A DNA stretch of 64,000 bases from Haplodiscus bocki (Eukaryota): positions 100,316,001 to 100,380,000 of the forward strand of contig OZ296652.1 of NCBI GenBank assembly GCA_965655095.1, given 5' to 3'. Positions 36,927 to 64,000 of this stretch are shown piece after piece. Position 1 is the first letter of the stretch. Every line of letters starts with the position of its first letter. The position numbers and the translations under genes were made by a program. A model generated the notes under the pieces. It saw nothing but the letters and a program-made list of their open reading frames with translations. It searched no databases and was not told the DNA's origin.

Positions 36927-36993
<67 letters not shown>

Positions 36994-39299
36994 CGTGTAA
37001 ATAAAAATATAGTCAGGATTTATATTAATGCGACTAGACGTTATTAAAACAACGTCAAATTTATTCATTGCAGACAAAAGTAACAAAATGCATAATCTTA
37101 GAAAACTATTAGGACTATATTGGTATTTATTTGAAAACTTCCAACAAATGTAGCAAAAATTAGAAAAGGCGTTTTCGGCCATATTTTACATTTTTAGAGA
37201 TTCTCCTGACTTTAAATATCAATTATGGATTTTTATTTTATCAATAGATGCCTTTGATTTTTTCAGTATCAGCCGATGTCATCTGGCGGCGGCAAAGTTT
37301 TCAAAAACTCTTCAAAACCCATCTTGAATCTACTAAAATTGAAAATCAATGCTTTAGAATAGGATGTTACAATTAGAATTTTACTTTTTGCAACTTGTTC
37401 TGAAAAGTTAATATTTTGGAAAAAGTGAGAAGGACAAAAACTTTGGGTAACAAGCAAAACCAACAGATCATCTAATTTGTTTCTGGCTATCTTGCGTCAC
37501 TGTCAAGATTTCTTACGAAAACTGCCAAAATTAGTCAGTTTATGCAATGCTTGTATAATTCATTTGCTCATGCCTACCCTGATCTCCCATTATTGCCTTC
37601 TCCACTTAGTGACCACATCGTGAAAGACAGCTCGACCGAATGAACTTTTTTAATTTTATGAATTCGGACCAGGATTTCTGTTGAGAACAATTTGAGTATT
37701 TGCGGAAGAGGGCTAAATTATGCAAGTATCGCCTTATTTTCAATTAGCAGTAAGAAAGCTGTTTTGAAGGGCAGAAGAGCTCTTTCGACAGGCAAAACCA
37801 CAAACAGCAAATGACTTCCAGGAAAGAAAGTTCAACCTTACATTATTGAAACAACAAAGCCGAAAAAACCCACATATAGTTTGACCAATTAAGGCGGAAC
37901 CGACTTAGGCCCTTCCCGGTTTGTTGAATATCTGATTAGGTATAATTTATACTCACTAACATTGAGAAAAAAAAAGATTTTCAGTCATCAAGAACATAAC
38001 ATAACAGAAACAAGATTGCGGCAACGTCCGAAAATGAGTGATAGAAATCGATATAAATAGAATATTACTGGAAAAGGGGCACCAATATTGAAGCAAATGA
38101 ATGATAGTAGACAGTTCACTTCTGTTGTATAAATTTTTGTTCATGTAACTTCTGGAGGTAATCCTGATACTGGTTTCGCGGAAAAAAAAAGATTTTGAAT
38201 ATCGACAAAATCCAATACAAATAGCCGTTCTTGGCATAATGGGGTTTCCTAATGCTAGGAAATAACCCGCGATATCTTCATAGAGTGACTCGCAAAATGA
38301 TAAAAAAAACGATGAAAACGTTGATTCAGAAAATCAAGCCTGTAATTTTGGAGAAATTGACAACCAAGAAAAACCTTCACTAATAGCAGTTTTTTGGAAT
38401 ATTAGCCCAATCTCTTTCTGCTGCAATGCCGAAACCCTAAGAAATTATTGTTCAAAAATAACCTACAAGACGGAAATTATCGACTCAGACCTTGATAGGG
38501 AAAATCCAGAAGCGGGAAAAAAGTCTGAATGTCGGGAAGGGTCCTACTGAAAGGGATTTTTAGGAATTTTCAACCTACCTATTCACTGTTCCAAGATATC
38601 ATTTTGAAAGGAAAACAGCGAAAATTGCGTAAATGCCTAAAATAGCGGAATATGAATTGAAATTACGAAAGGGAATTGCTCTATATATATGTTGCGTATA
38701 ATTCTAACAATAGTCAGGATTTATATTAATGCGACTAGACGTTATTAATACAAAAGCAAATTTACTCAATGCAGACAAAAGTAACAAAAAGCAAAATTTT
38801 ACAAATTTTATAGGACTATGATGGTATTTATTTGAAAACTTCCAACAAATGTAGCAAAAATTAGAAAAGTCGTTTTCGGCCATATTTTACATTTTTAGAG
38901 ATTCTCCTGACTTTAGATATTAATTATGGATTTTTATTTTATCAATAGATGCCTTTGATGTTTTCAGAGACAGCCGATGTCATCTGGCGGCGGAAAAGTT
39001 TTCAAAAACTCTTCAAAACCCATCTTGAATCTACTAAAGTTGAAAATCAAGGTATTAAAACAGGATGTTAAAATTATGATTTTTCTTTTTGCAACTTGTT
39101 CATTATTTTGGAGGAAGTGTTGAAGATAAAAAGTTCGGGGAACAAGCAAAACGAACAGATCATCTAATTCGTTTCTTGATATCTTGCGTCGCTGTCAAGA
39201 TTTCTAACGAAAACTGTCAAAATTAGTCAAGTTACGCCATGCTTGTATAATTTATATGCTCATGCCTACTCTGATCTCCTATTATTGACTCCTTCACTT
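34081..39299 (+). repeat. Three diverged tandem ~1.7-1.8 kb monomers (approx. 34081-35788, 35789-37607, 37608-39299)
   Basis: Shared anchors such as gagctctttcgacaggcaaaacca (~34250, 35960, 37778) and catctggcggcgg (~35460, 37280, 38981). The first copy is the most diverged. Confidence 0.9.
36931..36989. repeat. (TA)n microsatellite, ~29 units
   Basis: Read directly from the sequence. Confidence 0.95.
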
Positions 39300-39818
39300 G
39301 GGATTTAGTAAAGCGTATTAAAAATGCTTAGTCGCATTAATTTAAATCATGACTGTATGTCTGTGACACAGCAGTAGCAGCCATCCTACTTACAGCTGGC
39401 GACATACAACTTAAGCAAATTTGTAACTATGCCGAGAAGTTTCAAGCAACAACTAGTGTTGCAGAAGTGTCCGATTCCGTTATGTCCTGTCTCGAAAAAG
39501 ACGGTCAGTGTCGTACCAATAATTTCTTCCACCTTCGGTATTAAGAACGTGAAAACTTATTCAACAACAAACTTTAACTGAAATAATTTTTAAGGAACAG
39601 GGAAAAATTCAAGCCGACGTAAAAATATATTAAAATAGATCTATAATTTTTCCAGATATAACTTTTATAAAGATCAGGATAAAAGAAAATGCGGTTTCTG
39701 CCTAATATTAGTGGAAAAAAATATATCAAAATAGAATATCAGGGTAATGGAAAAAAATTCGATGAGCTATGAGCAATAAAGCACACTTCCAAAAAGGAGG
39801 GTGAGAATGAAAATTTTT

Positions 39819-40403
39819 TTAATAAAACCAGTAAAAAGTAAGCACCGACAGAGCACCAACGTACAAGGCAAAAACAAAATAGCATAGAATCCTGGGAACT
39901 AAATTTGGTGAAAAGGAAATAGGTTTATTAAAATTGCTGTCAACTATTAAAAACTCAAAGGAACCTGTTTGCCCAAATTTTGCAATTGTTGATTGACATT
40001 GGAGGCATAGATAATACGGCGAGAAGGAATTTAAGGCTTTGTACAGCGTAAACAAGAGAGAAGCGAATATTACGATATTTACAAATAGGCTTTTGACGAA
40101 GTCTGAGAACAAATTGTAGAAATACCGTACGGAGAAACTGCCGAAATCATGAAAACTAGTCAAGGAATGATAACAATACAGACAAGAAAAGATCCAAAGA
40201 AGGAAAAAGAGAAGACATAAAGCAAGCGTCACGGTCCTTCTTCTTCGTTTATAATAAATGTAGGTTTGAACCAAAGAATTGCAATAAGGGCAAACTAAGG
40301 TGTAAGAAGCAGCCCGAAGAGAAGTAAAAACTCTAACAACATTTCTCATGACATCCAATTCACCCGGATTATGGTCATCCATATCTAATTCTGAAAATTT
40401 CAT
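39819..40403 (-). CDS. LITAF-like zinc-knuckle membrane protein, 194 aa, copy 1
   Basis: Intact ATG-to-stop ORF. LVCPYCNSLVQTYIYY and YYLCLQCQSTIAKF match the two LITAF CxxC knuckles and flank hydrophobic segments. There is an extra C-terminal hydrophobic helix. Confidence 0.7.
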   Translation of the reverse strand: MKFSELDMDDHNPGELDVMRNVVRVFTSLRAASYTLVCPYCNSLVQTYIYYKRRRRTVTLALCLLFFLLWIFSCLYCYHSLTSFHDFGSFSVRYFYNLFSDFVKSLFVNIVIFASLLFTLYKALNSFSPYYLCLQCQSTIAKFGQTGSFEFLIVDSNFNKPISFSPNLVPRILCYFVFALYVGALSVLTFYWFY

Positions 40404-40951
40404 ACTTTCCTCAATCTGCTTTCAAATTATTCTACTCAAAATTATTCGTGCCCTGAAAAAGATGTTTGTTTGATACCCTCTCATTTCATGTAGTCTGACG
40501 ATGATTCTTTATACTGATAAGGCTTTTTATCTGAAAAGATGAGTTCTTTGAACGTGCTGAAGAAGGAAAACTCACTGCAAAGAATTATTTTTTCGCTTGC
40601 AACGAAATTAACTATATATTTTCAATCATGAGTAAAAAGGTATTAAAAACGCAAGTTCAGTTGTACCAGAAATGTATCCGCACATTTCTTATACTTCATC
40701 AGGTATGGTGCCAGGTAAAACGGAGAGTTGCGTTCTTTAATCGAAACCGACGGACATTGGAAAAGAAAAATACCTGATCTAATGTTACAAAGCTGCTACT
40801 TGTGATTACCATGATGCACAGAGTTACAAAGAATCGGGTATGAAAACATAGCCTGAGAGATTATAGCAGCAATAATCACATTATTCAAAATCAACACTTC
40901 AATAACTCCTCCGATAAAGGACTCTGCTAGATCTGTAGCTTTTCCGGGCTT

Positions 40952-42377
40952 TTTGTTGTCGTTGTTGGGAATTCGCAGCTTTAGCTGCAGGGCTCAGTGC
41001 CCCAGTCGTCATTTTAAAATAATGTCCTTTTTGCGGCACGTGGGGCAGTCGCAGGAGAGCTGCCAAGTGCACACGTTCGATTCCGAGTATTTTTCATCAA
41101 CAAGCTTCCACAATAATTTTAGAAGTCTGTTCTTCAGTCTTTGCGTGTTCATGAAGTCGATATAGTCGTCCAATCGATTGACGAGTCTGCAATTTCTGAA
41201 GATGAAATTGCTTCATCCTTTCTCTGTTCGTGTCTTCCGAAGTTTGAAGGTTTCACTTCTTCCTCTTATTTCGGGTCTCTCGGGTAGGCTGAAGCTGGTT
41301 CCCGTTTCTTCGTTTGTGATTTTCGATAAGAGCAGCACATCGTTCAACTGTAGAAACATTGGTAGCGGCAGGATGTTCAGGATTTTCAGTTGGCTTCGAT
41401 AACTCATTGTCTTATTCCCGGTTATCCATCCCACTACCTTCTTCTGGAAATTTTCTAGTAGGTGGAGATCTGCTCTTGATGCAAAGACACAAGCGAAACC
41501 GTACAACAGTACTGGCAAGATGAGAGACTTGTGCAGTCCTAGTTTTACAAGTGTCTGTACTTTCACTGCAACGTTTCTGCGGAGAAGGTATAGCCTTTTA
41601 TTGGCTTTCCTCAATCCCTCTTCGATGTGTATTTTCCAGGTTAGATTATCCGAGACATGGATGCCGAGATCTTCACAGTCTTTGAGTGATCTAGTTTTTG
41701 ATCCAAGATCTAGTTGAAACTTCGGTCACTGCCTCTAAAGGTGATTTTCGTACACTTGTCCATGGCAAGTTCCAATCTGTCCTTTTTCACCCATTCTTCA
41801 ACCCTATTCAGATCACCCTGTTTTTCCCAGTAAGATTTCTTAATTGAGAGTACTTTCAAGTCATCCGCAAAGATGAATGGTTCAGAAAAGGTTAGAACTT
41901 CCCGTAGATCGTTTATAAATATGCAGAACGGCAAAGGGCGCAAGAACCTTGGGGTACTCCACTAGTAGCACCTAGAGTTCTGGAGCTACAGTTGTCGATT
42001 CTCACAAATTGCTTGCGATTTTCAAGTTAGTTGATCAGGATTTCAAGTAGACCCCGCCTACCCCGATTTGGGCGACCTTTTGGATGAGTTCGTAATCAGG
42101 CACCTTATAGAAGGCTTTAGAGAAGTCAGTGTAGAAGGCCACAATTTCGGAGTTTGGGTCGCTGTCCAGCGCTTCATGTATCTTTTTGAGAAAGGACAAC
42201 ATGTTCGAAAGAACGGATCTGTGCTTCACAAACCCGTGTTGATGATTGGTAAGTTAGAAGGTGAAGTGGTTGCAGAGAGCTTTATAAATGCATTTTTCAA
42301 ATATTTTGCTTTCGATGTTCACTAGAGAGACTGGTAGGTAGCTACTGACTAATTCGTCTATCCCCTTTTTTGTGAAA
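40952..42377 (-). mobile_element. Truncated, frameshifted CR1/L2-group LINE (RT to 3' end), copy 1
   Basis: HKKGD..YLPVSL, QHGF, YTDFSKAF, GVPQG and FINDL...FADDLK motifs, then ANKRLYLLRR and a C-terminal CTWQLSCDCPTCR, followed by a short CAA-rich tail. Several frameshifts. Confidence 0.9.
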
Positions 42378-44571
42378 AGACAGCTCGACCGAATGAACTT
42401 TTCCAATTTTATGAACTCGGACCAGGATTTCTGTTGAGAACAATTTGAGTATTTGCGGAAGAGGGCTAAATTATGCAAGTATCGCCTTATTTTCAATTAG
42501 CAGTAAGAAAGCTGTTTTGAAGGGCAGAAGAGCTCTTTCGACAGGCAAAACCACAAACAGCAAATGACTTCCAGGAAAGAAAGTTCAACCTTACATTATT
42601 GAAACAACAAAGCCGAAAAAACCCACATATAGTTTGACCAATTAAGGCGGAACCGACTTAGGCCCTTCCCGGTTTGTTGAATATCTGATTAGGTATAATT
42701 TATACTCACTAACATTGAGAAAAAAAAAGATTTTCAGTCATCAAGAACATAACATAACAGAAACAAGATTGCGGCAACATCCGAAAATGAGTGATAGAAA
42801 TCGATATAAATAGAATATTACTGGAAAAGGGGCACCAATATTGAAGCAAATGAATGATAGTAGACAGTTCACTTCTGTTGTATAAATTTTTGTTCATGTA
42901 ACTTCTGGAGGTAATCCTGATACTGGTTTCGCGGAAAAAAAAGATTTTGAATATCGACAAAATCCAATACAAATAGCCGTTCTTGGCATAATGGGGTTTC
43001 CTAATGCTAGGAAATAACCCGCGATATCTTCACAGAGTGACTCGCAAAATGATAAAAAAAAACGATGGAAACGTTGATTCAGAAAATCAAGCCTGTAATT
43101 TTGCAGAAATTGACAACCAAGAAAAACCTTCACTAATAGCATTTTTTTGGAATATTAGCCCAATCTCTTTCTGCTGCAATGCCGAAACCCTAAGAAATTA
43201 TTGTTCAAAAATAACCTACAAGACGGAAATTATCGACTCAGACCTTGATAGGGAAAATCCAGAAGCGGGAAAAAAGTCTGAATGTCGGGAAGGGTCCTAC
43301 TGAAAGGGATTTTTAGGAATTTTCAACCTACCTATTCACTGTTCCAAGATATCATTTTGAAAGGAAAACAGCGAAAATTGCGTAAATGCCTAAAATAGCG
43401 GAATATGAATTGAAATTACGAAAGGGAATTGCTCTATATATATGTTGCGTATAATTCTAACAATAGTCAGGATTTATATTAATGCGACTAGACGTTATTA
43501 ATACAAAAGCAAATTTACTCAATGCAGACAAAAGTAACAAAAAGCAAAATTTTACAAATTTTATAGGACTATGATGGTATTTATTTGAAAACTTCCAACA
43601 AATGTAGCAAAAATTAGAAAAGTCGTTTTCGGCCATATTTTACATTTTTAGAGATTCTCCTGACTTTAGATATTAATTATGGATTTTTATTTTATCAATA
43701 GATGCCTTTGATGTTTTCAGAGACAGCCGATGTCATCTGGCGGCGGAAAAGTTTTCAAAAACTCTTCAAAACCCATCTTGAATCTACTAAAGTTGAAAAT
43801 CAAGGTATTAAAACAGGATGTTAAAATTATGATTTTTCTTTTTGCAACTTGTTCATTATTTTGGAGGAAGTGTTGAAGATAAAAAGTTCGGGGAACAAGC
43901 AAAACGAACAGATCATCTAATTCGTTTCTTGATATCTTGCGTCGCTGTCAAGATTTCTAACGAAAACTGTCAAAATTAGTCAAGTTACGCCATGCTTGTA
44001 TAATTTATATGCTCATGCCTACTCTGATCTCCTATTATTGACTCCTTCACTTGGGATTTAGTAAAGCGTATTAAAAATGCTTAGTCGCATTAATTTAAAT
44101 CATGACTGTATGTCTGTGACACAGCAGTAGCAGCCATCCTACTTACAGCTGGCGACATACAACTTAAGCAAATTTGTAACTATGCCGAGAAGTTTCAAGC
44201 AACAACTAGTGTTGCAGAAGTGTCCGATTCCGTTATGTCCTGTCTCGAAAAAGACGGTCAGTGTCGTACCAATAATTTCTTCCACCTTCGGTATTAAGAA
44301 CGTGAAAACTTATTCAACAACAAACTTTAACTGAAATAATTTTTAAGGAACAGGGAAAAATTCAAGCCGACGTAAAAATATATTAAAATAGATCTATAAT
44401 TTTTCCAGATATAACTTTTATAAAGATCAGGATAAAAGAAAATGCGGTTTCTGCCTAATATTAGTGGAAAAAAATATATCAAAATAGAATATCAGGGTAA
44501 TGGAAAAAAATTCGATGAGCTATGAGCAATAAAGCACACTTCCAAAAAGGAGGGTGAGAATGAAAATTTTT

Positions 44572-45156
44572 TTAATAAAACCAGTAAAAAGTAAGCACCG
44601 ACAGAGCACCAACGTACAAGGCAAAAACAAAATAGCATAGAATCCTGGGAACTAAATTTGGTGAAAAGGAAATAGGTTTATTAAAATTGCTGTCAACTAT
44701 TAAAAACTCAAAGGAACCTGTTTGCCCAAATTTTGCAATTGTTGATTGACATTGGAGGCATAGATAATACGGCGAGAAGGAATTTAAGGCTTTGTACAGC
44801 GTAAACAAGAGAGAAGCGAATATTACGATATTTACAAATAGGCTTTTGACGAAGTCTGAGAACAAATTGTAGAAATACCGTACGGAGAAACTGCCGAAAT
44901 CATGAAAACTAGTCAAGGAATGATAACAATACAGACAAGAAAAGATCCAAAGAAGGAAAAAGAGAAGACATAAAGCAAGCGTCACGGTCCTTCTTCTTCG
45001 TTTATAATAAATGTAGGTTTGAACCAAAGAATTGCAATAAGGGCAAACTAAGGTGTAAGAAGCAGCCCGAAGAGAAGTAAAAACTCTAACAACATTTCTC
45101 ATGACATCCAATTCACCCGGATTATGGTCATCCATATCTAATTCTGAAAATTTCAT
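44572..45156 (-). CDS. LITAF-like protein, copy 2
   Basis: Protein identical to copy 1 in the ORF track. Confidence 0.7.
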   Translation of the reverse strand: MKFSELDMDDHNPGELDVMRNVVRVFTSLRAASYTLVCPYCNSLVQTYIYYKRRRRTVTLALCLLFFLLWIFSCLYCYHSLTSFHDFGSFSVRYFYNLFSDFVKSLFVNIVIFASLLFTLYKALNSFSPYYLCLQCQSTIAKFGQTGSFEFLIVDSNFNKPISFSPNLVPRILCYFVFALYVGALSVLTFYWFY

Positions 45157-45704
45157 ACTTTCCTCAATCTGCTTTCAAATTATTCTACTCAAAATTATTC
45201 GTGCCCTGAAAAAGATGTTTGTTTGATACCCTCTCATTTCATGTAGTCTGACGATGATTCTTTATACTGATAAGGCTTTTTATCTGAAAAGATGAGTTCT
45301 TTGAACGTGCTGAAGAAGGAAAACTCACTGCAAAGAATTATTTTTTCGCTTGCAACGAAATTAACTATATATTTTCAATCATGAGTAAAAAGGTATTAAA
45401 AACGCAAGTTCAGTTGTACCAGAAATGTATCCGCACATTTCTTATACTTCATCAGGTATGGTGCCAGGTAAAACGGAGAGTTGCGTTCTTTAATCGAAAC
45501 CGACGGACATTGGAAAAGAAAAATACCTGATCTAATGTTACAAAGCTGCTACTTGTGATTACCATGATGCACAGAGTTACAAAGAATCGGGTATGAAAAC
45601 ATAGCCTGAGAGATTATAGCAGCAATAATCACATTATTCAAAATCAACACTTCAATAACTCCTCCGATAAAGGACTCTGCTAGATCTGTAGCTTTTCCGG
45701 GCTT

Positions 45705-47130
45705 TTTGTTGTCGTTGTTGGGAATTCGCAGCTTTAGCTGCAGGGCTCAGTGCCCCAGTCGTCATTTTAAAATAATGTCCTTTTTGCGGCACGTGGGGCA
45801 GTCGCAGGAGAGCTGCCAAGTGCACACGTTCGATTCCGAGTATTTTTCATCAACAAGCTTCCACAATAATTTTAGAAGTCTGTTCTTCAGTCTTTGCGTG
45901 TTCATGAAGTCGATATAGTCGTCCAATCGATTGACGAGTCTGCAATTTCTGAAGATGAAATTGCTTCATCCTTTCTCTGTTCGTGTCTTCCGAAGTTTGA
46001 AGGTTTCACTTCTTCCTCTTATTTCGGGTCTCTCGGGTAGGCTGAAGCTGGTTCCCGTTTCTTCGTTTGTGATTTTCGATAAGAGCAGCACATCGTTCAA
46101 CTGTAGAAACATTGGTAGCGGCAGGATGTTCAGGATTTTCAGTTGGCTTCGATAACTCATTGTCTTATTCCCGGTTATCCATCCCACTACCTTCTTCTGG
46201 AAATTTTCTAGTAGGTGGAGATCTGCTCTTGATGCAAAGACACAAGCGAAACCGTACAACAGTACTGGCAAGATGAGAGACTTGTGCAGTCCTAGTTTTA
46301 CAAGTGTCTGTACTTTCACTGCAACGTTTCTGCGGAGAAGGTATAGCCTTTTATTGGCTTTCCTCAATCCCTCTTCGATGTGTATTTTCCAGGTTAGATT
46401 ATCCGAGACATGGATGCCGAGATCTTCACAGTCTTTGAGTGATCTAGTTTTTGATCCAAGATCTAGTTGAAACTTCGGTCACTGCCTCTAAAGGTGATTT
46501 TCGTACACTTGTCCATGGCAAGTTCCAATCTGTCCTTTTTCACCCATTCTTCAACCCTATTCAGATCACCCTGTTTTTCCCAGTAAGATTTCTTAATTGA
46601 GAGTACTTTCAAGTCATCCGCAAAGATGAATGGTTCAGAAAAGGTTAGAACTTCCCGTAGATCGTTTATAAATATGCAGAACGGCAAAGGGCGCAAGAAC
46701 CTTGGGGTACTCCACTAGTAGCACCTAGAGTTCTGGAGCTACAGTTGTCGATTCTCACAAATTGCTTGCGATTTTCAAGTTAGTTGATCAGGATTTCAAG
46801 TAGACCCCGCCTACCCCGATTTGGGCGACCTTTTGGATGAGTTCGTAATCAGGCACCTTATAGAAGGCTTTAGAGAAGTCAGTGTAGAAGGCCACAATTT
46901 CGGAGTTTGGGTCGCTGTCCAGCGCTTCATGTATCTTTTTGAGAAAGGACAACATGTTCGAAAGAACGGATCTGTGCTTCACAAACCCGTGTTGATGATT
47001 GGTAAGTTAGAAGGTGAAGTGGTTGCAGAGAGCTTTATAAATGCATTTTTCAAATATTTTGCTTTCAATGTTCACTAGAGAGACTGGTAGGTAGCTACTG
47101 ACTAATTCGTCTATCCCCTTTTTTGTGAAA
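45705..47130 (-). mobile_element. Truncated CR1/L2-group LINE, copy 2
   Basis: Repeat of 40952-42377. Confidence 0.9.
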
Positions 47131-49325: not shown

Positions 49326-49910
49326 TTAATAAAACCAGTAAAAAGTAAGCACCGACAGAGCACCAACGTACAAGGCAAAAACAAAATAGCATAGAATCCT
49401 GGGAACTAAATTTGGTGAAAAGGAAATAGGTTTATTGAAATTGCTGTCAACTATTAAAAACTCAAAGGAACCTGTTTGCCCAAATTTTGCAATTGTTGAT
49501 TGACATTGGAGGCATAGATAATACGGCGAGAAGGAATTTAAGGCTTTGTACAGCGTAAACAAGAGAGAAGCGAATATTACGATATTTACAAATAGGCTTT
49601 TGACGAAGTCTGAGAACAAATTGTAGAAATACCGTACGGAGAAACTGCCGAAATCATGAAAACTAGTCAAGGAATGATAACAATACAGACAAGAAAAGAT
49701 CCAAAGAAGGAAAAAGAGAAGACATAAAGCAAGCGTCACGGTCCTTCTTCTTCGTTTATAATAAATGTAGGTTTGAACCAAAGAATTGCAATAAGGGCAA
49801 ACTAAGGTGTAAGAAGCAGCCCGAAGAGAAGTAAAAACTCTAACAACATTTCTCATGACATCCAATTCACCCGGATTATGGTCATCCATATCTAATTCTG
49901 AAAATTTCAT
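49326..49910 (-). CDS. LITAF-like protein, copy 3
   Basis: Identical protein, with one synonymous TTT>TTC change. Confidence 0.7.
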   Translation of the reverse strand: MKFSELDMDDHNPGELDVMRNVVRVFTSLRAASYTLVCPYCNSLVQTYIYYKRRRRTVTLALCLLFFLLWIFSCLYCYHSLTSFHDFGSFSVRYFYNLFSDFVKSLFVNIVIFASLLFTLYKALNSFSPYYLCLQCQSTIAKFGQTGSFEFLIVDSNFNKPISFSPNLVPRILCYFVFALYVGALSVLTFYWFY

Positions 49911-54078: not shown

Positions 54079-54663
54079 TTAATAAAACCAGTAAAAAGTA
54101 AGCACCGACAGAGCACCAACGTACAAGGCAAAAACAAAATAGCATAGAATCCTGGGAACTAAATTTGGTGAAAAGGAAATAGGTTTATTGAAATTGCTGT
54201 CAACTATTAAAAACTCAAAGGAACCTGTTTGCCCAAATTTTGCAATTGTTGATTGACATTGGAGGCATAGATAATACGGCGAGAAGGAATTTAAGGCTTT
54301 GTACAGCGTAAACAAGAGAGAAGCGAATATTACGATATTTACAAATAGGCTTTTGACGAAGTCTGAGAACAAATTGTAGAAATACCGTACGGAGAAACTG
54401 CCGAAATCATGAAAACTAGTCAAGGAATGATAACAATACAGACAAGAAAAGATCCAAAGAAGGAAAAAGAGAAGACATAAAGCAAGCGTCACGGTCCTTC
54501 TTCTTCGTTTATAATAAATGTAGGTTTGAACCAAAGAATTGCAATAAGGGCAAACTAAGGTGTAAGAAGCAGCCCGAAGAGAAGTAAAAACTCTAACAAC
54601 ATTTCTCATGACATCCAATTCACCCGGATTATGGTCATCCATATCTAATTCTGAAAATTTCAT
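54079..54663 (-). CDS. LITAF-like protein, copy 4
   Basis: Identical protein. Confidence 0.7.
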   Translation of the reverse strand: MKFSELDMDDHNPGELDVMRNVVRVFTSLRAASYTLVCPYCNSLVQTYIYYKRRRRTVTLALCLLFFLLWIFSCLYCYHSLTSFHDFGSFSVRYFYNLFSDFVKSLFVNIVIFASLLFTLYKALNSFSPYYLCLQCQSTIAKFGQTGSFEFLIVDSNFNKPISFSPNLVPRILCYFVFALYVGALSVLTFYWFY

Positions 54664-55211
54664 ACTTTCCTCAATCTGCTTTCAAATTATTCTACTCAAA
54701 ATTATTCGTGCCCTGAAAAAGATGTTTGTTTGATACTCTCTCATTTCATGTAGTCTGACGATGATTCTTTATACTGATAAGGCTTTTTATCTGAAAAGAT
54801 GAGTTCTTTGAACGTGCTGAAGAAGGAAAACTCACTGCAAAGAATTATTTTTTCGCTTGCAACGAAATTAACTATATATTTTCAATCATGAGTAAAAAGG
54901 TATTAAAAACGCAAGTTCAGTTGTACCAGAAATGTATCCGCACATTTCTTATACTTCATCAGGTATGGTGCCAGGTAAAACGGAGAGTTGCGTTCTTTAA
55001 TCGAAACCGACGGACATTGGAAAAGAAAAATACCTGATCTAATGTTACAAAGCTGCTACTTGTGATTACCATGATGCACAGAGTTACAAAGAATCGGGTA
55101 TGAAAACATAGCCTGAGAGATTATAGCAGCAATAATCACATTATTCAAAATCAACACTTCAATAACTCCTCCGATAAAGGACTCTGCTAGATCTGTAGCT
55201 TTTCCGGGCTT

Positions 55212-56637
55212 TTTGTTGTCGTTGTTGGGAATTCGCAGCTTTAGCTGCAGGGCTCAGTGCCCCAGTCGTCATTTTAAAATAATGTCCTTTTTGCGGCACG
55301 TGGGGCAGTCGCAGGAGAGCTGCCAAGTGCACACGTTCGATTCCGAGTATTTTTCATCAACAAGCTTCCACAATAATTTTAGAAGTCTGTTCTTCAGTCT
55401 TTGCGTGTTCATGAAGTCGATATAGTCGTCCAATCGATTGACGAGTCTGCAATTTCTGAAGATGAAATTGCTTCATCCTTTCTCTGTTCGTGTCTTCCGA
55501 AGTTTGAAGGTTTCACTTCTTCCTCTTATTTCGGGTCTCTCGGGTAGGCTGAAGCTGGTTCCCGTTTCTTCGTTTGTGATTTTCGATAAGAGCAGCACAT
55601 CGTTCAACTGTAGAAACATTGGTAGCGGCAGGATGTTCAGGATTTTCAGTTGGCTTCGATAACTCATTGTCTTATTCCCGGTTATCCATCCCACTACCTT
55701 CTTCTGGAAATTTTCTAGTAGGTGGAGATCTGCTCTTGATGCAAAGACACAAGCGAAACCGTACAACAGTACTGGCAAGATGAGAGACTTGTACAGTCCT
55801 AGTTTTACAAGTGTCTGTACTTTCACTGCAACGTTTCTGCGGAGAAGGTATAGCCTTTTATTGGCTTTCCTCAATCCCTCTTCGATGTGTATTTTCCAGG
55901 TTAGATTATCCGAGACATGGATGCCGAGATCTTCACAGTCTTTGAGTGATCTAGTTTTTGATCCAAGATCTAGTTGAAACTTCGGTCACTGCCTCTAAAG
56001 GTGATTTTCGTACACTTGTCCATGGCAAGTTCCAATCTGTCCTTTTTCACCCATTCTTCAACCCTATTCAGATCACCCTGTTTTTCCCAGTAAGATTTCT
56101 TAATTGAGAGTACTTTCAAGTCATCCGCAAAGATGAATGGTTCAGAAAAGGTTAGAACTTCCCGTAGATCGTTTATAAATATGCAGAACGGCAAAGGGCG
56201 CAAGAACCTTGGGGTACTCCACTAGTAGCACCTAGAGTTCTGGAGCTACAGTTGTCGATTCTCACAAATTGCTTGCGATTTTCAAGTTAGTTGATCAGGA
56301 TTTCAAGTAGACCCCGCCTACCCCGATTTGGGCGACCTTTTGGATGAGTTCGTAATCAGGCACCTTATAGAAGGCTTTAGAGAAGTCAGTGTAGAAGGCC
56401 ACAATTTCGGAGTTTGGGTCGCTGTCCAGCGCTTCATGTATCTTTTTGAGAAAGGACAACATGTTCGAAAGAACGGATCTGTGCTTCACAAACCCGTGTT
56501 GATGATTGGTAAGTTAGAAGGTGAAGTGGTTGCAGAGAGCTTTATAAATGCATTTTTCAAATATTTTGCTTTCGATGTTCACTAGAGAGACTGGTAGGTA
56601 GCTACTGACTAATTCGTCTATCCCCTTTTTTGTGAAA
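55212..56637 (-). mobile_element. Truncated CR1/L2-group LINE, copy 4
   Basis: Repeat of 40952-42377. Confidence 0.9.
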
Positions 56638-58831
56638 AGACAGCTCGACCGAATGAACTTTTCCAATTTTATGAACTCGGACCAGGATTTCTGTTGAGAA
56701 CAATTTGAGTATTTGCGGAAGAGGGCTAAATTATGCAAGTATCGCCTTATTTTCAATTAGCAGTAAGAAAGCTGTTTTGAAGGGCAGAAGAGCTCTTTCG
56801 ACAGGCAAAACCACAAACAGCAAATGACTTCCAGGAAAGAAAGTTCAACCTTACATTATTGAAACAACAAAGCCGAAAAAACCCACATATAGTTTGACCA
56901 ATTAAGGCGGAACCGACTTAGGCCCTTCCCGGTTTGTTGAATATCTGATTAGGTATAATTTATACTCACTAACATTGAGAAAAAAAAAGATTTTCAGTCA
57001 TCAAGAACATAACATAACAGAAACAAGATTGCGGCAACGTCCGAAAATGAGTGATAGAAATCGATATAAATAGAATATTACTGGAAAAGGGGCACCAATA
57101 TTGAAGCAAATGAATGATAGTAGACAGTTCACTTCTGTTGTATAAATTTTTGTTCATGTAACTTCTGGAGGTAATCCTGATACTGGTTTCGCGGAAAAAA
57201 AAAGATTTTGAATATCGACAAAATCCAATACAAATAGCCGTTCTTGGCATAATGGGGTTTCCTAATGCTAGGAAATAACCCGCGATATCTTCATAGAGTG
57301 ACTCGCAAAATGATAAAAAAAACGATGAAAACGTTGATTCAGAAAATCAAGCCTGTAATTTTGGAGAAATTGACAACCAAGAAAAACCTTCACTAATAGC
57401 ATTTTTTTGGAATATTAGCCCAATCTCTTTCTGCTGCAATGCCGAAACCCTAAGAAATTATTGTTCAAAAATAACCTACAAGACGGAAATTATCGACTCA
57501 GACCTTGATAGGGAAAATCCAGAAGCGGGAAAAAAGTCTGAATGTCGGGAAGGGTCCTACTGAAAGGGATTTTTAGGAATTTTCAACCTACCTATTCACT
57601 GTTCCAAGATATCTATTTGAAAGGAAAACAGCGAAAATTGCGTAAATGCCTAAAATAGCGGAATATGAATTGAAATTACGAAAGGGAATTGCTCTATATA
57701 TATGTTGCGTATAATTCTAACAATAGTCAGGATTTATATTAATGCGACTAGACGTTATTAATACAAAAGCAAATTTACTCAATGCAGACAAAAGTAACAA
57801 AAAGCAAAATTTTACAAATTTTATAGGACTATGATGGTATTTATTTGAAAACTTCCAACAAATGTAGCAAAAATTAGAAAAGTCGTTTTCGGCCATATTT
57901 TACATTTTTAGAGATTCTCCTGACTTTAGATATTAATTATGGATTTTTATTTTATCAATAGATGCCTTTGATGTTTTCAGAGACAGCCGATGTCATCTGG
58001 CGGCGGAAAAGTTTTCAAAAACTCTTCAAAACCCATCTTGAATCTACTAAAGTTGAAAATCAAGGTATTAAAACAGGATGTTAAAATTATGATTTTTCTT
58101 TTTGCAACTTGTTCATTATTTTGGAGGAAGTGTTGAAGATAAAAAGTTCGGGGAACAAGCAAAACGAACAGATCATCTAATTCGTTTCTTGATATCTTGC
58201 GTCGCTGTCAAGATTTCTAACGAAAACTGTCAAAATTAGTCAAGTTACGCCATGCTTGTATAATTTATATGCTCATGCCTACTCTGATCTCCTATTATTG
58301 ACTCCTTCACTTGGGATTTAGTAAAGCGTATTAAAAATGCTTAGTCGCATTAATTTAAATCATGACTGTATGTCTGTGACACAGCAGTAGCAGCCATCCT
58401 ACTTACAGCTGGCGACATACAACTTAAGCAAATTTGTAACTATGCCGAGAAGTTTCAAGCAACAATTAGTGTTGCAGAAGTGTCCGATTCCGTTATGTCC
58501 TGTCTCGAAAAAGACGGTCAGTGTCGTACCAATAATTTCTTCCACCTTCGGTATTAAGAACGTGAAAACTTATTCAACAACAAACTTTAACTGAAATAAT
58601 TTTTAAGGAACAGGGAAAAATTCAAGCCGACGTAAAAATATATTAAAATAGATCTATAATTTTTCCAGATATAACTTTTATAAAGATCAGGATAAAAGAA
58701 AATGCGGTTTCTGCCTAATATTAGTGGAAAAAAATATATCAAAATAGAATATCAGGGTAATGGAAAAAAATTCGATGAGCTATGAGCAATAAAGCACACT
58801 TCCAAAAAGGAGGGTGAGAATGAAAATTTTT

Positions 58832-59416
58832 TTAATAAAACCAGTAAAAAGTAAGCACCGACAGAGCACCAACGTACAAGGCAAAAACAAAATAGCATAG
58901 AATCCTGGGAACTAAATTTGGTGAAAAGGAAATAGGTTTATTGAAATTGCTGTCAACTATTAAAAACTCAAAGGAACCTGTTTGCCCAAATTTTGCAATT
59001 GTTGATTGACATTGGAGGCATAGATAATACGGCGAGAAGGAATTTAAGGCTTTGTACAGCGTAAACAAGAGAGAAGCGAATATTACGATATTTACAAATA
59101 GGCTTTTGACGAAGTCTGAGAACAAATTGTAGAAATACCGTACGGAGAAACTGCCGAAATCATGAAAACTAGTCAAGGAATGATAACAATACAGACAAGA
59201 AAAGATCCAAAGAAGGAAAAAGAGAAGACATAAAGCAAGCGTCACGGTCCTTCTTCTTCGTTTATAATAAATGTAGGTTTGAACCAAAGAATTGCAATAA
59301 GGGCAAACTAAGGTGTAAGAAGCAGCCCGAAGAGAAGTAAAAACTCTAACAACATTTCTCATGACATCCAATTCACCCGGATTATGGTCATCCATATCTA
59401 ATTCTGAAAATTTCAT
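58832..59416 (-). CDS. LITAF-like protein, copy 5
   Basis: Identical protein. Confidence 0.7.
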   Translation of the reverse strand: MKFSELDMDDHNPGELDVMRNVVRVFTSLRAASYTLVCPYCNSLVQTYIYYKRRRRTVTLALCLLFFLLWIFSCLYCYHSLTSFHDFGSFSVRYFYNLFSDFVKSLFVNIVIFASLLFTLYKALNSFSPYYLCLQCQSTIAKFGQTGSFEFLIVDSNFNKPISFSPNLVPRILCYFVFALYVGALSVLTFYWFY

Positions 59417-59964
59417 ACTTTCCTCAATCTGCTTTCAAATTATTCTACTCAAAATTATTCGTGCCCTGAAAAAGATGTTTGTTTGATACCCTCTCATTTC
59501 ATGTAGTCTGACGATGATTCTTTATACTGATAAGGCTTTTTATCTGAAAAGATGAGTTCTTTGAACGTGCTGAAGAAGGAAAACTCACTGCAAAGAATTA
59601 TTTTTTCGCTTGCAACGAAATTAACTATATATTTTCAATCATGAGTAAAAAGGTATTAAAAACGCAAGTTCAGTTGTACCAGAAATGTATCCGCACATTT
59701 CTTATACTTCATCAGGTATGGTGCCAGGTAAAACGGAGAGTTGCGTTCTTTAATCGAAACCGACGGACATTGGAAAAGAAAAATACCTGATCTAATGTTA
59801 CAAAGCTGCTACTTGTGATTACCATGATGCACAGAGTTACAAAGAATCGGGTATGAAAACATAGCCTGAGAGATTATAGCAGCAATAATCACATTATTCA
59901 AAATCAACACTTCAATAACTCCTCCGATAAAGGACTCTGCTAGATCTGTAGCTTTTCCGGGCTT

Positions 59965-61390
59965 TTTGTTGTCGTTGTTGGGAATTCGCAGCTTTAGCTG
60001 CAGGGCTCAGTGCCCCAGTCGTCATTTTAAAATAATGTCCTTTTTGCGGCACGTGGGGCAGTCGCAGGAGAGCTGCCAAGTGCACACGTTCGATTCCGAG
60101 TATTTTTCATCAACAAGCTTCCACAATAATTTTAGAAGTCTGTTCTTCAGTCTTTGCGTGTTCATGAAGTCGATATAGTCGTCCAATCGATTGACGAGTC
60201 TGCAATTTCTGAAGATGAAATTGCTTCATCCTTTCTCTGTTCGTGTCTTCCGAAGTTTGAAGGTTTCACTTCTTCCTCTTATTTCGGGTCTCTCGGGTAG
60301 GCTGAAGCTGGTTCCCGTTTCTTCGTTTGTGATTTTCGATAAGAGCAGCACATCGTTCAACTGTAGAAACATTGGTAGCGGCAGGATGTTCAGGATTTTC
60401 AGTTGGCTTCGATAACTCATTGTCTTATTCCCGGTTATCCATCCCACTACCTTCTTCTGGAAATTTTCTAGTAGGTGGAGATCTGCTCTTGATGCAAAGA
60501 CACAAGCGAAACCGTACAACAGTACTGGCAAGATGAGAGACTTGTACAGTCCTAGTTTTACAAGTGTCTGTACTTTCACTGCAACGTTTCTGCGGAGAAG
60601 GTATAGCCTTTTATTGGCTTTCCTCAATCCCTCTTCGATGTGTATTTTCCAGGTTAGATTATCCGAGACATGGATGCCGAGATCTTCACAGTCTTTGAGT
60701 GATCTAGTTTTTGATCCAAGATCTAGTTGAAACTTCGGTCACTGCCTCTAAAGGTGATTTTCGTACACTTGTCCATGGCAAGTTCCAATCTGTCCTTTTT
60801 CACCCATTCTTCAACCCTATTCAGATCACCCTGTTTTTCCCAGTAAGATTTCTTAATTGAGAGTACTTTCAAGTCATCCGCAAAGATGAATGGTTCAGAA
60901 AAGGTTAGAACTTCCCGTAGATCGTTTATAAATATGCAGAACGGCAAAGGGCGCAAGAACCTTGGGGTACTCCACTAGTAGCACCTAGAGTTCTGGAGCT
61001 ACAGTTGTCGATTCTCACAAATTGCTTGCGATTTTCAAGTTAGTTGATCAGGATTTCAAGTAGACCCCGCCTACCCCGATTTGGGCGACCTTTTGGATGA
61101 GTTCGTAATCAGGCACCTTATAGAAGGCTTTAGAGAAGTCAGTGTAGAAGGCCACAATTTCGGAGTTTGGGTCGCTGTCCAGCGCTTCATGTATCTTTTT
61201 GAGAAAGGACAACATGTTCGAAAGAACGGATCTGTGCTTCACAAACCCGTGTTGATGATTGGTAAGTTAGAAGGTGAAGTGGTTGCAGAGAGCTTTATAA
61301 ATGCATTTTTCAAATATTTTGCTTTCGATGTTCACTAGAGAGACTGGTAGGTAGCTACTGACTAATTCGTCTATCCCCTTTTTTGTGAAA
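59965..61390 (-). mobile_element. Truncated CR1/L2-group LINE, copy 5
   Basis: Repeat of 40952-42377. Confidence 0.9.
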
Positions 61391-63583
61391 AGACAGCTCG
61401 ACCGAATGAACTTTTCCAATTTTATGAACTCGGACCAGGATTTCTGTTGAGAACAATTTGAGTATTTGCGGAAGAGGGCTAAATTATGCAAGTATCGCCT
61501 TATTTTCAATTAGCAGTAAGAAAGCTGTTTTGAAGGGCAGAAGAGCTCTTTCGACAGGCAAAACCACAAACAGCAAATGACTTCCAGGAAAGAAAGTTCA
61601 ACCTTACATTATTGAAACAACAAAGCCGAAAAAACCCACATATAGTTTGACCAATTAAGGCGGAACCGACTTAGGCCCTTCCCGGTTTGTTGAATATCTG
61701 ATTAGGTATAATTTATACTCACTAACATTGAGAAAAAAAAGATTTTCAGTCATCAAGAACATAACATAACAGAAACAAGATTGCGGCAACGTCCGAAAAT
61801 GAGTGATAGAAATCGATATAAATAGAATATTACTGGAAAAGGGGCACCAATATTGAAGCAAATGAATGATAGTAGACAGTTCACTTCTGTTGTATAAATT
61901 TTTGTTCATGTAACTTCTGGAGGTAATCCTGATACTGGTTTCGCGGAAAAAAAAAGATTTTGAATATCGACAAAATCCAATACAAATAGCCGTTCTTGGC
62001 ATAATGGGGTTTCCTAATGCTAGGAAATAACCCGCGATATCTTCATAGAGTGACTCGCAAAATGATAAAAAAAACGATGGAAACGTTGATTCAGAAAATG
62101 AAGCCTATAATTTTGGAGAAATTGACAACCAAGAAAAACCTTCACTAATAGCATTTTTCTGGAATATTAGCCCAATCTCTTTCTGCTGCAATGCCGAAAC
62201 CCTAAGAAATTATTGTTCAAAAATAACCTACAAGAAGGAAATTATCGATTCAGACCTTGATAGGGAAAATCCAGAAGCGGGAAAAAAGTCTGAATGTCGG
62301 GAAGGGTCCTACTGAAAGGGATTTTTAGGAATTTTCAACCTACCTATTCACTGTTCCAAGATATCATTTTGAAAGGAAAACAGCGAAAATTGCGTAAATG
62401 CCTAAAATAGCGGAATATGAATTGAAATTACGAAAGGGAATTGCTCTATATATATGTTGCGTATAATTCTAACAATAGTCAGGATTTATATTAATGCGAC
62501 TAGACGTTATTAATACAAAAGCAAATTTACTCAATGCAGACAAAAGTAACAAAAAGCAAAATTTTACAAATTTTATAGGACTATGATGGTATTTATTTGA
62601 AAACTTCCAACAAATGTAGCAAAAATTAGAAAAGTCGTTTTCGGCCATATTTTACATTTTTAGAGATTCTCCTGACTTTAGATATTAATTATGGATTTTT
62701 ATTTTATCAATAGATGCCTTTGATGTTTTCAGAGACAGCCGATGTCATCTGGCGGCGGAAAAGTTTTCAAAAACTCTTCAAAACCCATCTTGAATCTACT
62801 AAAGTTGAAAATCAAGGTATTAAAACAGGATGTTAAAATTATGATTTTTCTTTTTGCAACTTGTTCATTATTTTGGAGGAAGTGTTGAAGATAAAAAGTT
62901 CGGGGAACAAGCAAAACGAACAGATCATCTAATTCGTTTCTTGATATCTTGCGTCGCTGTCAAGATTTCTAACGAAAACTGTCAAAATTAGTCAAGTTAC
63001 GCCATGCTTGTATAATTTATATGCTCATGCCTACTCTGATCTCCTATTATTGACTCCTTCACTTGGGATTTAGTAAAGCGTATTAAAAATGCTTAGTCGC
63101 ATTAATTTAAATCATGACTGTATGTCTGTGACACAGCAGTAGCAGCCATCCTACTTACAGCTGGCGACATACAACTTAAGCAAATTTGTAACTATGCCGA
63201 GAAGTTTCAAGCAACAATTAGTGTTGCAGAAGTGTCCGATTCCGTTATGTCCTGTCTCGAAAAAGACGGTCAGTGTCGTACCAATAATTTCTTCCACCTT
63301 CGGTATTAAGAACGTGAAAACTTATTCAACAACAAACTTTAACTGAAATAATTTTTAAGGAACAGGGAAAAATTCAAGCCGACGTAAAAATATATTAAAA
63401 TAGATCTATAATTTTTCCAGATATAACTTTTATAAAGATCAGGATAAAAGAAAATGCGGTTTCTGCCTAATATTAGTGGAAAAAAATATATCAAAATAGA
63501 ATATCAGGGTAATGGAAAAAAATTCGATGAGCTATGAGCAATAAAGCACACTTCCAAAAAGGAGGGTGAGAATGAAAATTTTT

Positions 63584-64000
63584 TTAATAAAACCAGTAAA
63601 AAGTAAGCACCGACAGAGCACCAACGTACAAGGCAAAAACAAAATAGCATAGAATCCTGGGAACTAAATTTGGTGAAAAGGAAATAGGTTTATTGAAATT
63701 GCTGTCAACTATTAAAAACTCAAAGGAACCTGTTTGCCCAAATTTTGCAATTGTTGATTGACATTGGAGGCATAGATAATACGGCGAGAAGGAATTTAAG
63801 GCTTTGTACAGCGTAAACAAGAGAGAAGCGAATATTACGATATTTACAAATAGGCTTTTGACGAAGTCTGAGAACAAATTGTAGAAATACCGTACGGAGA
63901 AACTGCCGAAATCATGAAAACTAGTCAAGGAATGATAACAATACAGACAAGAAAAGATCCAAAGAAGGAAAAAGAGAAGACATAAAGCAAGCGTCACGGT
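63584..64000 (-). CDS. LITAF-like protein, copy 6 (5' part beyond window end)
   Basis: The C-terminal portion is identical and is cut by the window edge. Confidence 0.65.
   Translation of the reverse strand, partial: TVTLALCLLFFLLWIFSCLYCYHSLTSFHDFGSFSVRYFYNLFSDFVKSLFVNIVIFASLLFTLYKALNSFSPYYLCLQCQSTIAKFGQTGSFEFLIVDSNFNKPISFSPNLVPRILCYFVFALYVGALSVLTFYWFY

What the first reader, a model, noticed from the sequence alone, without database searches (positions are those of the whole stretch)
37620..64000. Very recent tandem amplification of an intact LITAF-like gene (at least 6 copies)
Seen: every 4.75-kb unit contains one clean, domain-bearing ORF, while the rest of the unit is dead LINE and decayed monomer. 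The protein is identical in all complete copies, and the one CDS variant I noticed is synonymous. Known: LITAF/SIMPLE-domain proteins are endolysosomal membrane proteins tied to innate immunity and membrane-damage responses, and are also encoded by some iridoviruses. Inference: a dosage-type gene amplification, possibly in immunity, symbiosis or stress. Copies are too young for identity alone to prove selection.
Basis: partly seen in the sequence, partly recalled or inferred. Interest (0 to 1): 0.75.

Follow-up and report, generated by a model that had tools for sequence, protein, structure and literature searches.

The report
Six-copy tandem array of LITAF-like gene
An acoel worm genome carries six nearly identical head-to-tail copies of a small, conserved membrane-protein gene that is single-copy in two related worms; this is an ordinary young gene amplification, but the protein is an unusual stretched version of the LITAF zinc-ribbon domain.

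Summary
Six complete 4,753/4,754-bp head-to-tail units (window 37623 to 2,141 bp past the window end) are 99.5-99.9% identical. Each carries an identical intronless 194-codon ORF on the minus strand. These are the only six copies in the 1.5-Gb assembly.

The ORF is a real gene. Two other acoel-like genomes hold it as a single copy in the same position, upstream of PSMG3-like and ARFRP1-like genes. It is 72% and 42% identical at the protein level, with most changes at third codon positions (dN about 0.17, dS saturated).

It passes the Pfam LITAF cut-off only through its N-terminal half. The two zinc knuckles lie 91 residues apart rather than about 47, with a second hydrophobic helix between them and a third at the C-terminus. 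No other relative turned up among 1.84 billion representative proteins.

All junctions share a 5-bp microhomology (GTGAA). The right breakpoint lies inside a LINE. This points to one non-homologous duplication followed by unequal exchange.

Selection for dosage is untestable: about one CDS variant is expected by chance and one (synonymous) is seen. An independent assembly breaks inside the array with differently shuffled unit variants, so six copies is not independently confirmed.

Earlier scan notes list other kb-scale amplifications in this genome, none involving this gene. I verified one.

The parts
37623..64000 (.). Tandem array of six 4,753/4,754-bp units. The sixth continues 2,141 bp beyond the window end (G000:C5 to about 100382141).
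   Evidence: units 99.5-99.9% identical; L031 1-2140 matches unit positions 2614-4753 at 99.95% and the homology then stops
39819..40403 (-). LITAF-like ORF, copy 1 (194 codons from the first ATG). The start conserved with the orthologues is the ATG at 40382, giving 187 aa.
44572..45156 (-). LITAF-like ORF, copy 2
49326..49910 (-). LITAF-like ORF, copy 3
54079..54663 (-). LITAF-like ORF, copy 4
58832..59416 (-). LITAF-like ORF, copy 5
63584..64000 (-). LITAF-like ORF, copy 6. It is cut by the window end but complete in the assembly (C5:100379587-100380168).
37623..39299 (+). Monomer part of unit 1 (unit positions 1-1677), repeated in every unit. Positions 1151-1640 are an old dispersed repeat of about 500 bp.
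39300..40952 (-). Locus-specific unique part of unit 1 (unit positions 1678-3330): about 520 bp of 3' flank, the ORF, and about 550 bp of 5' flank.
   Evidence: in the whole genome only the six array copies match this stretch
40953..42375 (-). The 3' 1.42 kb of a LINE (reverse-transcriptase C-terminal region) in unit 1, same orientation as the gene. It is cut at the duplication breakpoint. Only the sixth unit continues into the rest of the element.
34097..37607 (+). Two older tandem copies of the 1.7-kb monomer: 34097-35788 at 84% identity; 35804-36929 plus 36981-37607 at 95% and 88%.
37620..37624 (+). GTGAA microhomology at the left edge of the array. The same 5 bp lie at every internal junction and at the right edge.
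40391..40397 (-). TTTTCAG, a candidate splice or trans-splice acceptor 8 nt upstream of the conserved ATG. An equivalent motif is present in both relatives.
   Evidence: background frequency 3.7%
28371..28763 (-). PSMG3/PAC3-like gene, the conserved downstream neighbour (synteny anchor).
25597..26049 (-). ARFRP1-like exon, the second synteny anchor. It also gave the taxon lead.

Best explanation
This is a real, very young six-unit tandem amplification of a 4.75-kb segment in an acoel genome.

Origin of the array (inferred from the junctions). The segment runs from 15 bp inside a local 1.7-kb monomer to a point inside a LINE upstream of the gene. A first duplication joined the two ends through a 5-bp microhomology. 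Unequal exchange between the 4.75-kb units then raised the number to six. Gene conversion with the older monomer copies added variants to the monomer part.

The gene (shown). Each unit carries a bona fide protein-coding gene. It is intronless within the ORF and restricted to this lineage. It is under purifying selection but evolves about 7 times faster than its neighbour.

The protein (inferred). It is a membrane protein built on a LITAF-type zinc ribbon. Two CxxC knuckles sit on the cytosolic face. The canonical single membrane-embedded helix is replaced by a helical hairpin, and a tail-anchor-like helix is added at the C-terminus.

Expression and selection (inferred, not shown). Every copy keeps about 550 bp of unique upstream sequence and a conserved acceptor-like motif just before the start codon, so all six are potentially expressed. 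The amplification is most simply a neutral or nearly neutral structural variant of a kind this genome makes often. It raises potential dosage, but nothing shows that this was selected.
For: Array: searches show six units with identical junctions. The genome holds only these six copies.

Junctions: GTGAA lies at the left edge, at all internal junctions and at the right edge. The LINE continues beyond unit 6.

Gene conversion: 20 of 26 variable columns fall in the first 1012 bp (p = 2e-9). The five private variants of unit 6 at unit positions 713-862 all equal the state of the older monomer.

Real gene: orthologues sit in four haplotigs from two other samples, single copy, with PAC3-like and ARFRP1-like genes downstream. 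Against relative 1, codon positions 1, 2 and 3 differ at 38, 24 and 103 sites; dN is 0.155-0.174 and dS exceeds 1.6. The neighbouring PSMG3-like gene has dN 0.02 and dS 0.8-1.3. Allelic dN/dS is 0.055 and 0.27.

LITAF kinship: Pfam PF10601 scores 29.9 bits against a 23.8-bit cut-off, covering profile positions 3-53 of 70. Only four cysteines are invariant: C38, C41, C133 and C136. The C-terminal knuckle matches the end of a profile built from this genome's own LITAF domains, with the His retained in relative 2. Language-model neighbours are LITAF clusters.

Architecture: three conserved hydrophobic segments and a charge pattern that fits the topology. The AF2 element order is hairpin, helix, helix, hairpin, helix.

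Other amplifications: a 6.17-kb repeat of 2.3 copies at 99.3% identity was verified elsewhere on C5.
Against: No transcript or protein evidence exists for any copy. The only database entries are gene calls on genomic contigs.

The independent metaMDBG contig starts inside the array after 2.9 units. Its units carry different combinations of the same variants (20 mismatches in 12.9 kb against 1 in 7.8 kb of flank), so unit order and copy number are not independently confirmed.

The structure model has low confidence (pLDDT 55), and the fold search was uninformative.

Profile-profile comparison aligned only the N-terminal knuckle and the start of the helix.

Neutrality is a default position, not something shown.
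Confidence: 0.62

Rival explanations
1. Adaptive dosage amplification. Extra copies were selected because more of this endomembrane protein is advantageous, for example in handling algal symbionts, pathogens or membrane stress.
For: The gene is functional and fast-evolving, with dN about 7 times that of its neighbour. Every unit retains the whole gene plus about 550 bp upstream. Both relatives are single-copy. Canonical LITAF genes are also locally clustered in this genome. The nearest named relative is a photosymbiotic acoel.
Against: The data carry no signal of selection: about 1.1 CDS variants are expected and 1 is seen. The duplicated segment is bounded by arbitrary breakpoints, one inside a LINE and one inside a monomer. 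This genome also amplifies non-genic and dead sequence (earlier scan notes). There are no expression data.
Confidence: 0.2
2. Assembly artefact or mis-resolved array. The true haplotype has fewer units, or a different number, and the six-unit layout comes from how near-identical reads were threaded.
For: The independent assembly breaks within the array. Its unit variants are mosaics of those in the reference, while the flank is almost identical.
Against: Two assemblies both show at least 2.9 tandem units with the same junction. The reference array is anchored in unique sequence on both sides. The units are distinguishable by 26 variants. Long-read assemblers more often collapse such arrays than inflate them (general knowledge).
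Confidence: 0.08
3. The copies are silent relics in this species. The ORF is intact only because the array is too young to have decayed, and the gene may already be non-functional or unexpressed here.
For: There is no transcript evidence. A LINE sits 550 bp upstream and 5 kb of monomers now separate the gene from its conserved downstream neighbour. Upstream sequence shows no clear conservation apart from the acceptor-like motif.
Against: The focal ORF has kept its full length, all invariant residues and the acceptor motif since diverging from relative 1 at saturated dS. That requires long-term constraint in this lineage up to very recently.
Confidence: 0.1

Closest known systems
LITAF/SIMPLE domain proteins (Pfam PF10601 zf-LITAF-like; human LITAF and CDIP1)
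   Same: An N-terminal CxxC beta-hairpin is followed by a hydrophobic helix preceded by basic residues, then a C-terminal CxxC knuckle with an 'xIGxxG'-like tail. Four invariant cysteines sit where the zinc ligands lie in the published domain description (PMC5142333, PMC5095921). The Pfam score is above the gathering cut-off.
   Different: The knuckles are 91 residues apart rather than about 47. A second conserved hydrophobic helix lies between them. A C-terminal extension of about 58 residues ends in a third hydrophobic helix. The His of HxCxxC is replaced by Tyr in the focal protein and relative 1. There is no proline-rich N-terminus and there are no PPxY/PSAP motifs. Only profile positions 3-53 of 70 match.
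Young tandem gene arrays formed by duplication and unequal crossing-over (copy-number-variable gene clusters)
   Same: Head-to-tail units with identical junctions, very low divergence between units, mosaic sharing of variants between units, and single-copy orthologues in relatives.
   Different: The founding junction uses a 5-bp microhomology rather than flanking repeats, even though tandem monomers lie next to it. Variation is concentrated where older paralogous monomers can act as conversion donors.
SL trans-spliced genes of acoels (Symsagittifera roscoffensis, 30.2% of genes; PMC9911081)
   Same: A polypyrimidine-plus-CAG motif lies 5-10 nt upstream of the conserved start codon in all three lineages, and before the neighbouring PSMG3-like gene. 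The exact published 32-nt SL occurs in this genome.
   Different: No RNA evidence here. The motif could equally be the acceptor of an ordinary 5'-UTR intron.

Membership tests
LITAF-like zinc ribbon domain (PF10601) | Score above Pfam's gathering cut-off | tested here: met
   The focal protein scores 29.9 bits and relative 1 scores 25.7 bits against a 23.8-bit cut-off. Relative 2 scores 22.8 bits, just below it. The match covers only profile positions 3-53 of 70.
LITAF-like zinc ribbon domain (PF10601) | N-terminal CxxC knuckle in a beta-hairpin | tested here: met
   C38-P-Y-C41 is invariant in all five sequences. It is aligned by Pfam, by hhalign and by the profile built from this genome's own LITAF domains. 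AF2 places strands at 32-37 and 44-52.
LITAF-like zinc ribbon domain (PF10601) | Hydrophobic membrane anchor of about 22 residues directly after the first knuckle | tested here: met
   Residues 57-80 have a peak Kyte-Doolittle value of 2.5 and are preceded by KRRRR. The segment is conserved in both relatives.
LITAF-like zinc ribbon domain (PF10601) | C-terminal (H)xCxxC knuckle | tested here: inconclusive
   C133-L-Q-C136 is invariant. Relative 2 has E-H-S-C-L-N-C-S-S-V-I-G. It matches positions 44-57 of the own-genome LITAF profile at only 1-7 bits. Neither Pfam nor hhalign reaches it.
LITAF-like zinc ribbon domain (PF10601) | Compact domain with one hydrophobic stretch and about 45-50 residues between the two Cys pairs | tested here: not met
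   There are 91 residues between C41 and C133, against 47 in a canonical copy from the same genome (L012). Two hydrophobic helices lie between the knuckles.
LITAF-like zinc ribbon domain (PF10601) | Zinc coordination and monotopic membrane insertion with both halves cytosolic (PMC5142333, PMC5095921) | not testable with these tools
   Only the charge distribution and a low-confidence model are available.
LITAF/CDIP1 proper (vertebrate-type proteins) | Proline-rich N-terminus with PPxY / P(S/T)AP motifs | tested here: not met
   No such motifs are present, and residues 1-35 hold one or two prolines across the three orthologues.
Tandem array founded by non-allelic homologous recombination between flanking repeats | Long homology at both breakpoints of the founding duplication | tested here: not met
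   Only the 5-bp GTGAA is shared. No monomer follows the last unit.
SL trans-spliced gene | Acceptor site upstream of the start codon, and an SL present in the species | tested here: inconclusive
   The motif is present in three of three lineages against a 3.7% background. The SL 32-mer is present 1,641 times with up to 3 mismatches. There is no RNA evidence.

The most novel reading that the evidence does not exclude
The gene founds an acoel-specific class of polytopic membrane proteins. In this class the LITAF zinc ribbon clamps a transmembrane helical hairpin in place of the usual monotopic anchor. The six-copy array would be expressed through SL trans-splicing of read-through transcripts, possibly driven from the upstream LINE or a single promoter. 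Copy number would then translate directly into dosage and be under selection, for example for managing endolysosomal or symbiont-containing membranes in a photosymbiotic worm.
Probability: 0.1. Interest if true: 0.6.

Novelty: new variant of a known kind. Interest (0 to 1): 0.35.

Why it matters
The amplification itself is ordinary structural variation.

What it offers is a cleanly dated, fully resolved example of how a gene array starts and grows: one microhomology junction, then unequal exchange and local gene conversion. The genome appears to make such arrays often.

The protein is the more interesting part. It shows that the LITAF zinc ribbon tolerates a 44-residue insertion carrying a second membrane helix. 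That bears on how the domain sits in membranes.

If the candidate acceptor is a trans-splice site, the array would be a simple test of whether tandem copy number scales expression in an SL-trans-splicing animal.

Tried and rejected
- Tandem Repeats Finder found nothing, because its maximum period is 500 bp. The repeat finder and MAFFT were used instead.
- The weak seventh genomic hit on C12 (L007: 31% identity, four stops, no match to the two orthologues) was rejected as an older paralogue.
- The 221-aa and 255-aa database versions (P0001, P0021) are gene-caller artefacts that read TGA as Trp. The ORF is bounded by TGA under the standard code.
- hhalign between the family and this genome's canonical LITAF domains aligned only 32 columns of the N-terminal half.
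- The AF2 model from three sequences reached pLDDT 55. The ESM Atlas fold search gave only generic helical matches, with TM-score by query at most 0.45 and LITAF rows at 0.25-0.30. I take no evidence from it.
- The exhaustive HMMER search found no relatives beyond the two orthologue clusters.
- An upstream alignment showed no conserved promoter element apart from the acceptor-like motif.
- Rfam and tRNA scans of the window were empty.
- My first guess at the coordinates of an earlier scan note found no repeat. The adjacent 20 kb did.
- I considered an intron between the two knuckles and rejected it. The stretch is conserved in frame at the protein level in both relatives, with differences concentrated at third codon positions.
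- Virus or transposon cargo was rejected. The gene has conserved host synteny, and no copies exist outside the array.
- No spliced model had to be joined, the window contains no N, and nothing looked human.
Full report
**1. The observation.** The region from 37623 to the window end is a head-to-tail array with period 4753/4754 bp. Fetching the next 10 kb of the chromosome shows that the sixth unit ends 2,140-2,141 bp past the window and that homology then stops. The array is therefore exactly six units, about 28.5 kb. Pairwise identity between units is 99.5-99.9%, with 26 variable alignment columns in all.

Each unit holds an identical 194-codon ORF on the minus strand. A six-frame search of the whole 1.5-Gb assembly finds these six copies and nothing else credible. 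The seventh hit, on C12, has four stops and does not match the orthologues. The single CDS variant is TTT/TTC at codon 158, which is synonymous. An ORF this long arises in 1 of 1000 shuffles of the unit.

**2. Anatomy of a unit.** Coordinates below are unit positions, with unit 1 beginning at window 37623.
- Positions 1-1677 are a 'monomer'. Two older tandem copies lie just to the left, at 34097-35788 (84% identity) and 35804-37607 (88-95%). Its positions 1151-1640 are an old dispersed repeat of about 500 bp with thousands of genomic candidates.
- Positions 1678-3330 are unique to this locus. They hold the ORF (2197-2781) with about 520 bp downstream and about 550 bp upstream.
- Positions 3331-4753 are the 3' 1.42 kb of a LINE in the same orientation as the gene. 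Other genomic copies are 81-93% identical.

Only after unit 6 does the LINE continue, into its endonuclease and ORF1-like parts. The ancestral layout was therefore monomer, monomer, monomer, gene, full LINE.

**3. How the array arose.** The left edge, all five internal junctions and the right edge share the 5-bp sequence GTGAA. No longer homology is present. The left breakpoint lies 15 bp inside the third monomer and the right one inside the LINE body. No monomer follows the last unit.

The founding duplication was therefore microhomology-mediated (replication slippage, template switching or end joining) and not recombination between the neighbouring monomers. This is an inference from junction structure. 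Growth from two to six units by unequal exchange between 4.75-kb units is inferred from the identical junctions and from the mosaic sharing of variants. For example, units 2 and 3 share four variants, units 4 and 5 share two, and units 1 and 2 share three.

Variation is not uniform. Twenty of the 26 variable columns lie in the first 1012 bp (binomial p = 2e-9). All five private substitutions of unit 6 at unit positions 713-862 equal the state of the older monomer copy next to the array. That is the signature of a gene-conversion tract. In the non-monomer 3,076 bp only six columns vary, so the units differ there by at most about 0.13%.

**4. Is the copy number real?** A second assembly holds the locus: a metaMDBG-style contig from ENA sample ERZ26859043, fetched as L009 and L010. 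It begins inside the array and holds 2.9 units before entering the left flank. Its flank differs from the window at 1 of 7,801 positions. Its array part differs at 20 of 12,865. Those differences are re-assortments of the same unit variants.

Either the sample held a second haplotype with a recombined array, or one assembler threaded reads between units differently. At least three tandem units are therefore seen in two assemblies. 'Six' rests on the reference alone. I could not examine read depth.

**5. Is the ORF a gene?** Yes. The word-indexed search found an orthologue of 188 aa at 72% identity (P0002). The exhaustive HMMER search of 1.84 billion representatives found that one plus a second orthologue, P0003, which is 42% identical, and nothing else. 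Each has an allelic partner on a second haplotig of the same sample (P0020, P0021).

In all four haplotigs the gene is single-copy. It lies upstream of, and in the same orientation as, a PAC3/PSMG3-like gene followed by an ARFRP1-like exon. The window has the same arrangement at 28371-28763 and 25597-26049.

| Comparison | Result |
|---|---|
| Focal vs relative 1, differences at codon positions 1 / 2 / 3 | 38 / 24 / 103 |
| Focal vs relative 1, LITAF-like gene | dN 0.155-0.174, dS > 1.6 (saturated) |
| Focal vs relative 1, PSMG3-like neighbour | dN 0.02, dS 0.8-1.3 |
| Alleles within relative 1 (P0002 vs P0020) | dN/dS 0.055 |
| Alleles within relative 2 (P0003 vs P0021) | dN/dS 0.27 |

The gene is under purifying selection along its whole length, with omega roughly 0.1-0.15. 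It evolves about seven times faster than its neighbour. Within the array, selection cannot be read: about 1.1 CDS variants are expected and one is seen, and the chance of no nonsynonymous change is about 0.42.

**6. What the protein is.** Pfam's zf-LITAF-like model scores above its cut-off (29.9 against 23.8 bits), but only for profile positions 3-53 of 70. That covers the first CxxC knuckle and the hydrophobic helix. Language-model neighbours are LITAF clusters (score 0.86, 181 shared features; a lead only).

Across the five sequences exactly four cysteines are invariant: C38, C41, C133 and C136. The second pair sits in Y-Y-L-C-L-Q-C-Q-S-T-I-A-K-F-G. Relative 2 has E-H-S-C-L-N-C-S-S-V-I-G-P-Y-G, which is close to the canonical HxCPxCxxxIG end of the domain. 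A profile built from eleven canonical LITAF domains of this same genome matches it at its last 12-14 positions. The scores are weak, at 1-7 bits.

The two pairs are 91 residues apart, against 47 in a canonical paralogue. The extra stretch contains a second conserved hydrophobic segment (about 103-121). A C-terminal extension of about 58 residues carries an invariant SNFNKPI motif and a third hydrophobic segment that runs to the last residue.

The AF2 model is of low confidence (pLDDT 55, three sequences). Its order of elements is beta-hairpin, helix 57-86, helix 92-124, beta-hairpin, helix 168-193. Basic residues flank the cytosolic ends expected if both knuckles face the cytosol.

Published work defines the LITAF domain as two cysteine-bearing beta-sheet halves that coordinate one zinc on the cytosolic face, around a hydrophobic anchor that does not cross the membrane (PMC5142333, PMC5095921). 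My reading is inferred. This family keeps the zinc clamp but replaces the monotopic anchor with a helical hairpin long enough to span the bilayer twice, and adds a tail anchor. It lacks the proline-rich PPxY/PSAP N-terminus of LITAF and CDIP1. I file it as LITAF-related in origin but not as a canonical member, because the compact-domain criterion was tested and not met.

**7. Organism and expression signals.** The best named match of the neighbouring ARFRP1-like exon is Symsagittifera roscoffensis at 79% identity, an acoel of the family Convolutidae. The published 32-nt spliced leader of that species (PMC9911081) occurs in this genome 1,641 times with up to three mismatches, many of them exact. 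The genome is therefore from an acoel related to, but probably not identical with, S. roscoffensis.

A polypyrimidine-plus-CAG motif lies 5-10 nt upstream of the conserved start codon. That start is the second in-frame ATG of the focal ORF, at 40382. The motif is present in all three lineages. A similar motif precedes the PSMG3-like start. Such a motif precedes 3.7% of all ATGs in the window. Between the focal genome and relative 1 it is embedded in a block of about 17 nt that is identical apart from one inserted A, although synonymous sites are saturated.

It is a candidate splice or SL trans-splice acceptor. In S. roscoffensis 30.2% of genes are SL trans-spliced (PMC9911081). This cannot be tested here without RNA data. 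Every unit contains the motif and about 550 bp of unique upstream DNA, so no copy is obviously crippled.

**8. Context for the 'dosage' reading.** The genome has at least 20 canonical LITAF-domain loci, several in local clusters on C12, C9 and C1. Local duplication of the superfamily is therefore common here.

Kb-scale amplification is also not specific to genes. Earlier notes of this scan list many four- to eight-fold amplifications of dead viral or intergenic DNA. I verified one: 6.17 kb, 2.3 copies, 99.3% identity, at C5:49288994-49303339. The locus itself shows an older round of tandem duplication in the three monomers. A mutational propensity explains the array without selection. Adaptive dosage remains possible but unsupported.

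**9. Verdict.** The array is a real feature and the gene is real. The event is an ordinary, very young tandem amplification. The protein is a new architectural variant of the LITAF-like zinc ribbon, restricted so far to three acoel-like genomes.

Noticed in passing
G000 genome-wide, e.g. L039-L042 (C1:25472551, 36585249, 37509794, 53736641): The complete 32-nt spliced leader published for Symsagittifera roscoffensis occurs 1,641 times with up to 3 mismatches, spread over all chromosomes. In the four loci aligned, only about 34 nt are shared: both flanks are unrelated and no GT donor follows. These look like retroposed copies of trans-spliced mRNAs, or SL-capped element transcripts, rather than SL RNA genes.
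   Followed up: partly
window 25597-28763 (minus strand); L008, L037, L032, L038: The order LITAF-like, then PSMG3/PAC3-like, then ARFRP1-like, all in the same orientation, is conserved in three acoel-like genomes despite saturated synonymous divergence. In relative 1 the first two genes are only about 600 bp apart, and both have an acceptor-like motif just before the ATG. This could be an operon-like, trans-spliced arrangement.
   Followed up: partly
G000:C5:49288994-49303339 (L035, L036): A second recent tandem amplification on the same chromosome: 6,173-bp period, 2.3 copies, 99.3% identity. It corresponds to earlier scan note s1-376487. I did not examine its content.
   Followed up: partly
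L031:7022-8596 (minus strand), 7-8.6 kb beyond the window end: A 524-aa ORF with the look of a retroelement or viral envelope-type glycoprotein lies beyond the LINE.
   Followed up: no
G000:C12:12.03-12.52 Mb, C12:49.23-49.56 Mb, C1:191.77-191.81 Mb, C9:55.72-55.74 Mb: Local clusters of canonical LITAF-domain exons, at least 20 loci genome-wide. This suggests repeated local expansion of the superfamily in this acoel.
   Followed up: no
P0001 (L009/L010) and P0021 (L038): The public gene calls for these metagenome-style assemblies read TGA as Trp. That gives N- or C-terminally extended artefacts of 221 aa and 255 aa for what are 194- and 188-codon ORFs.
   Followed up: yes
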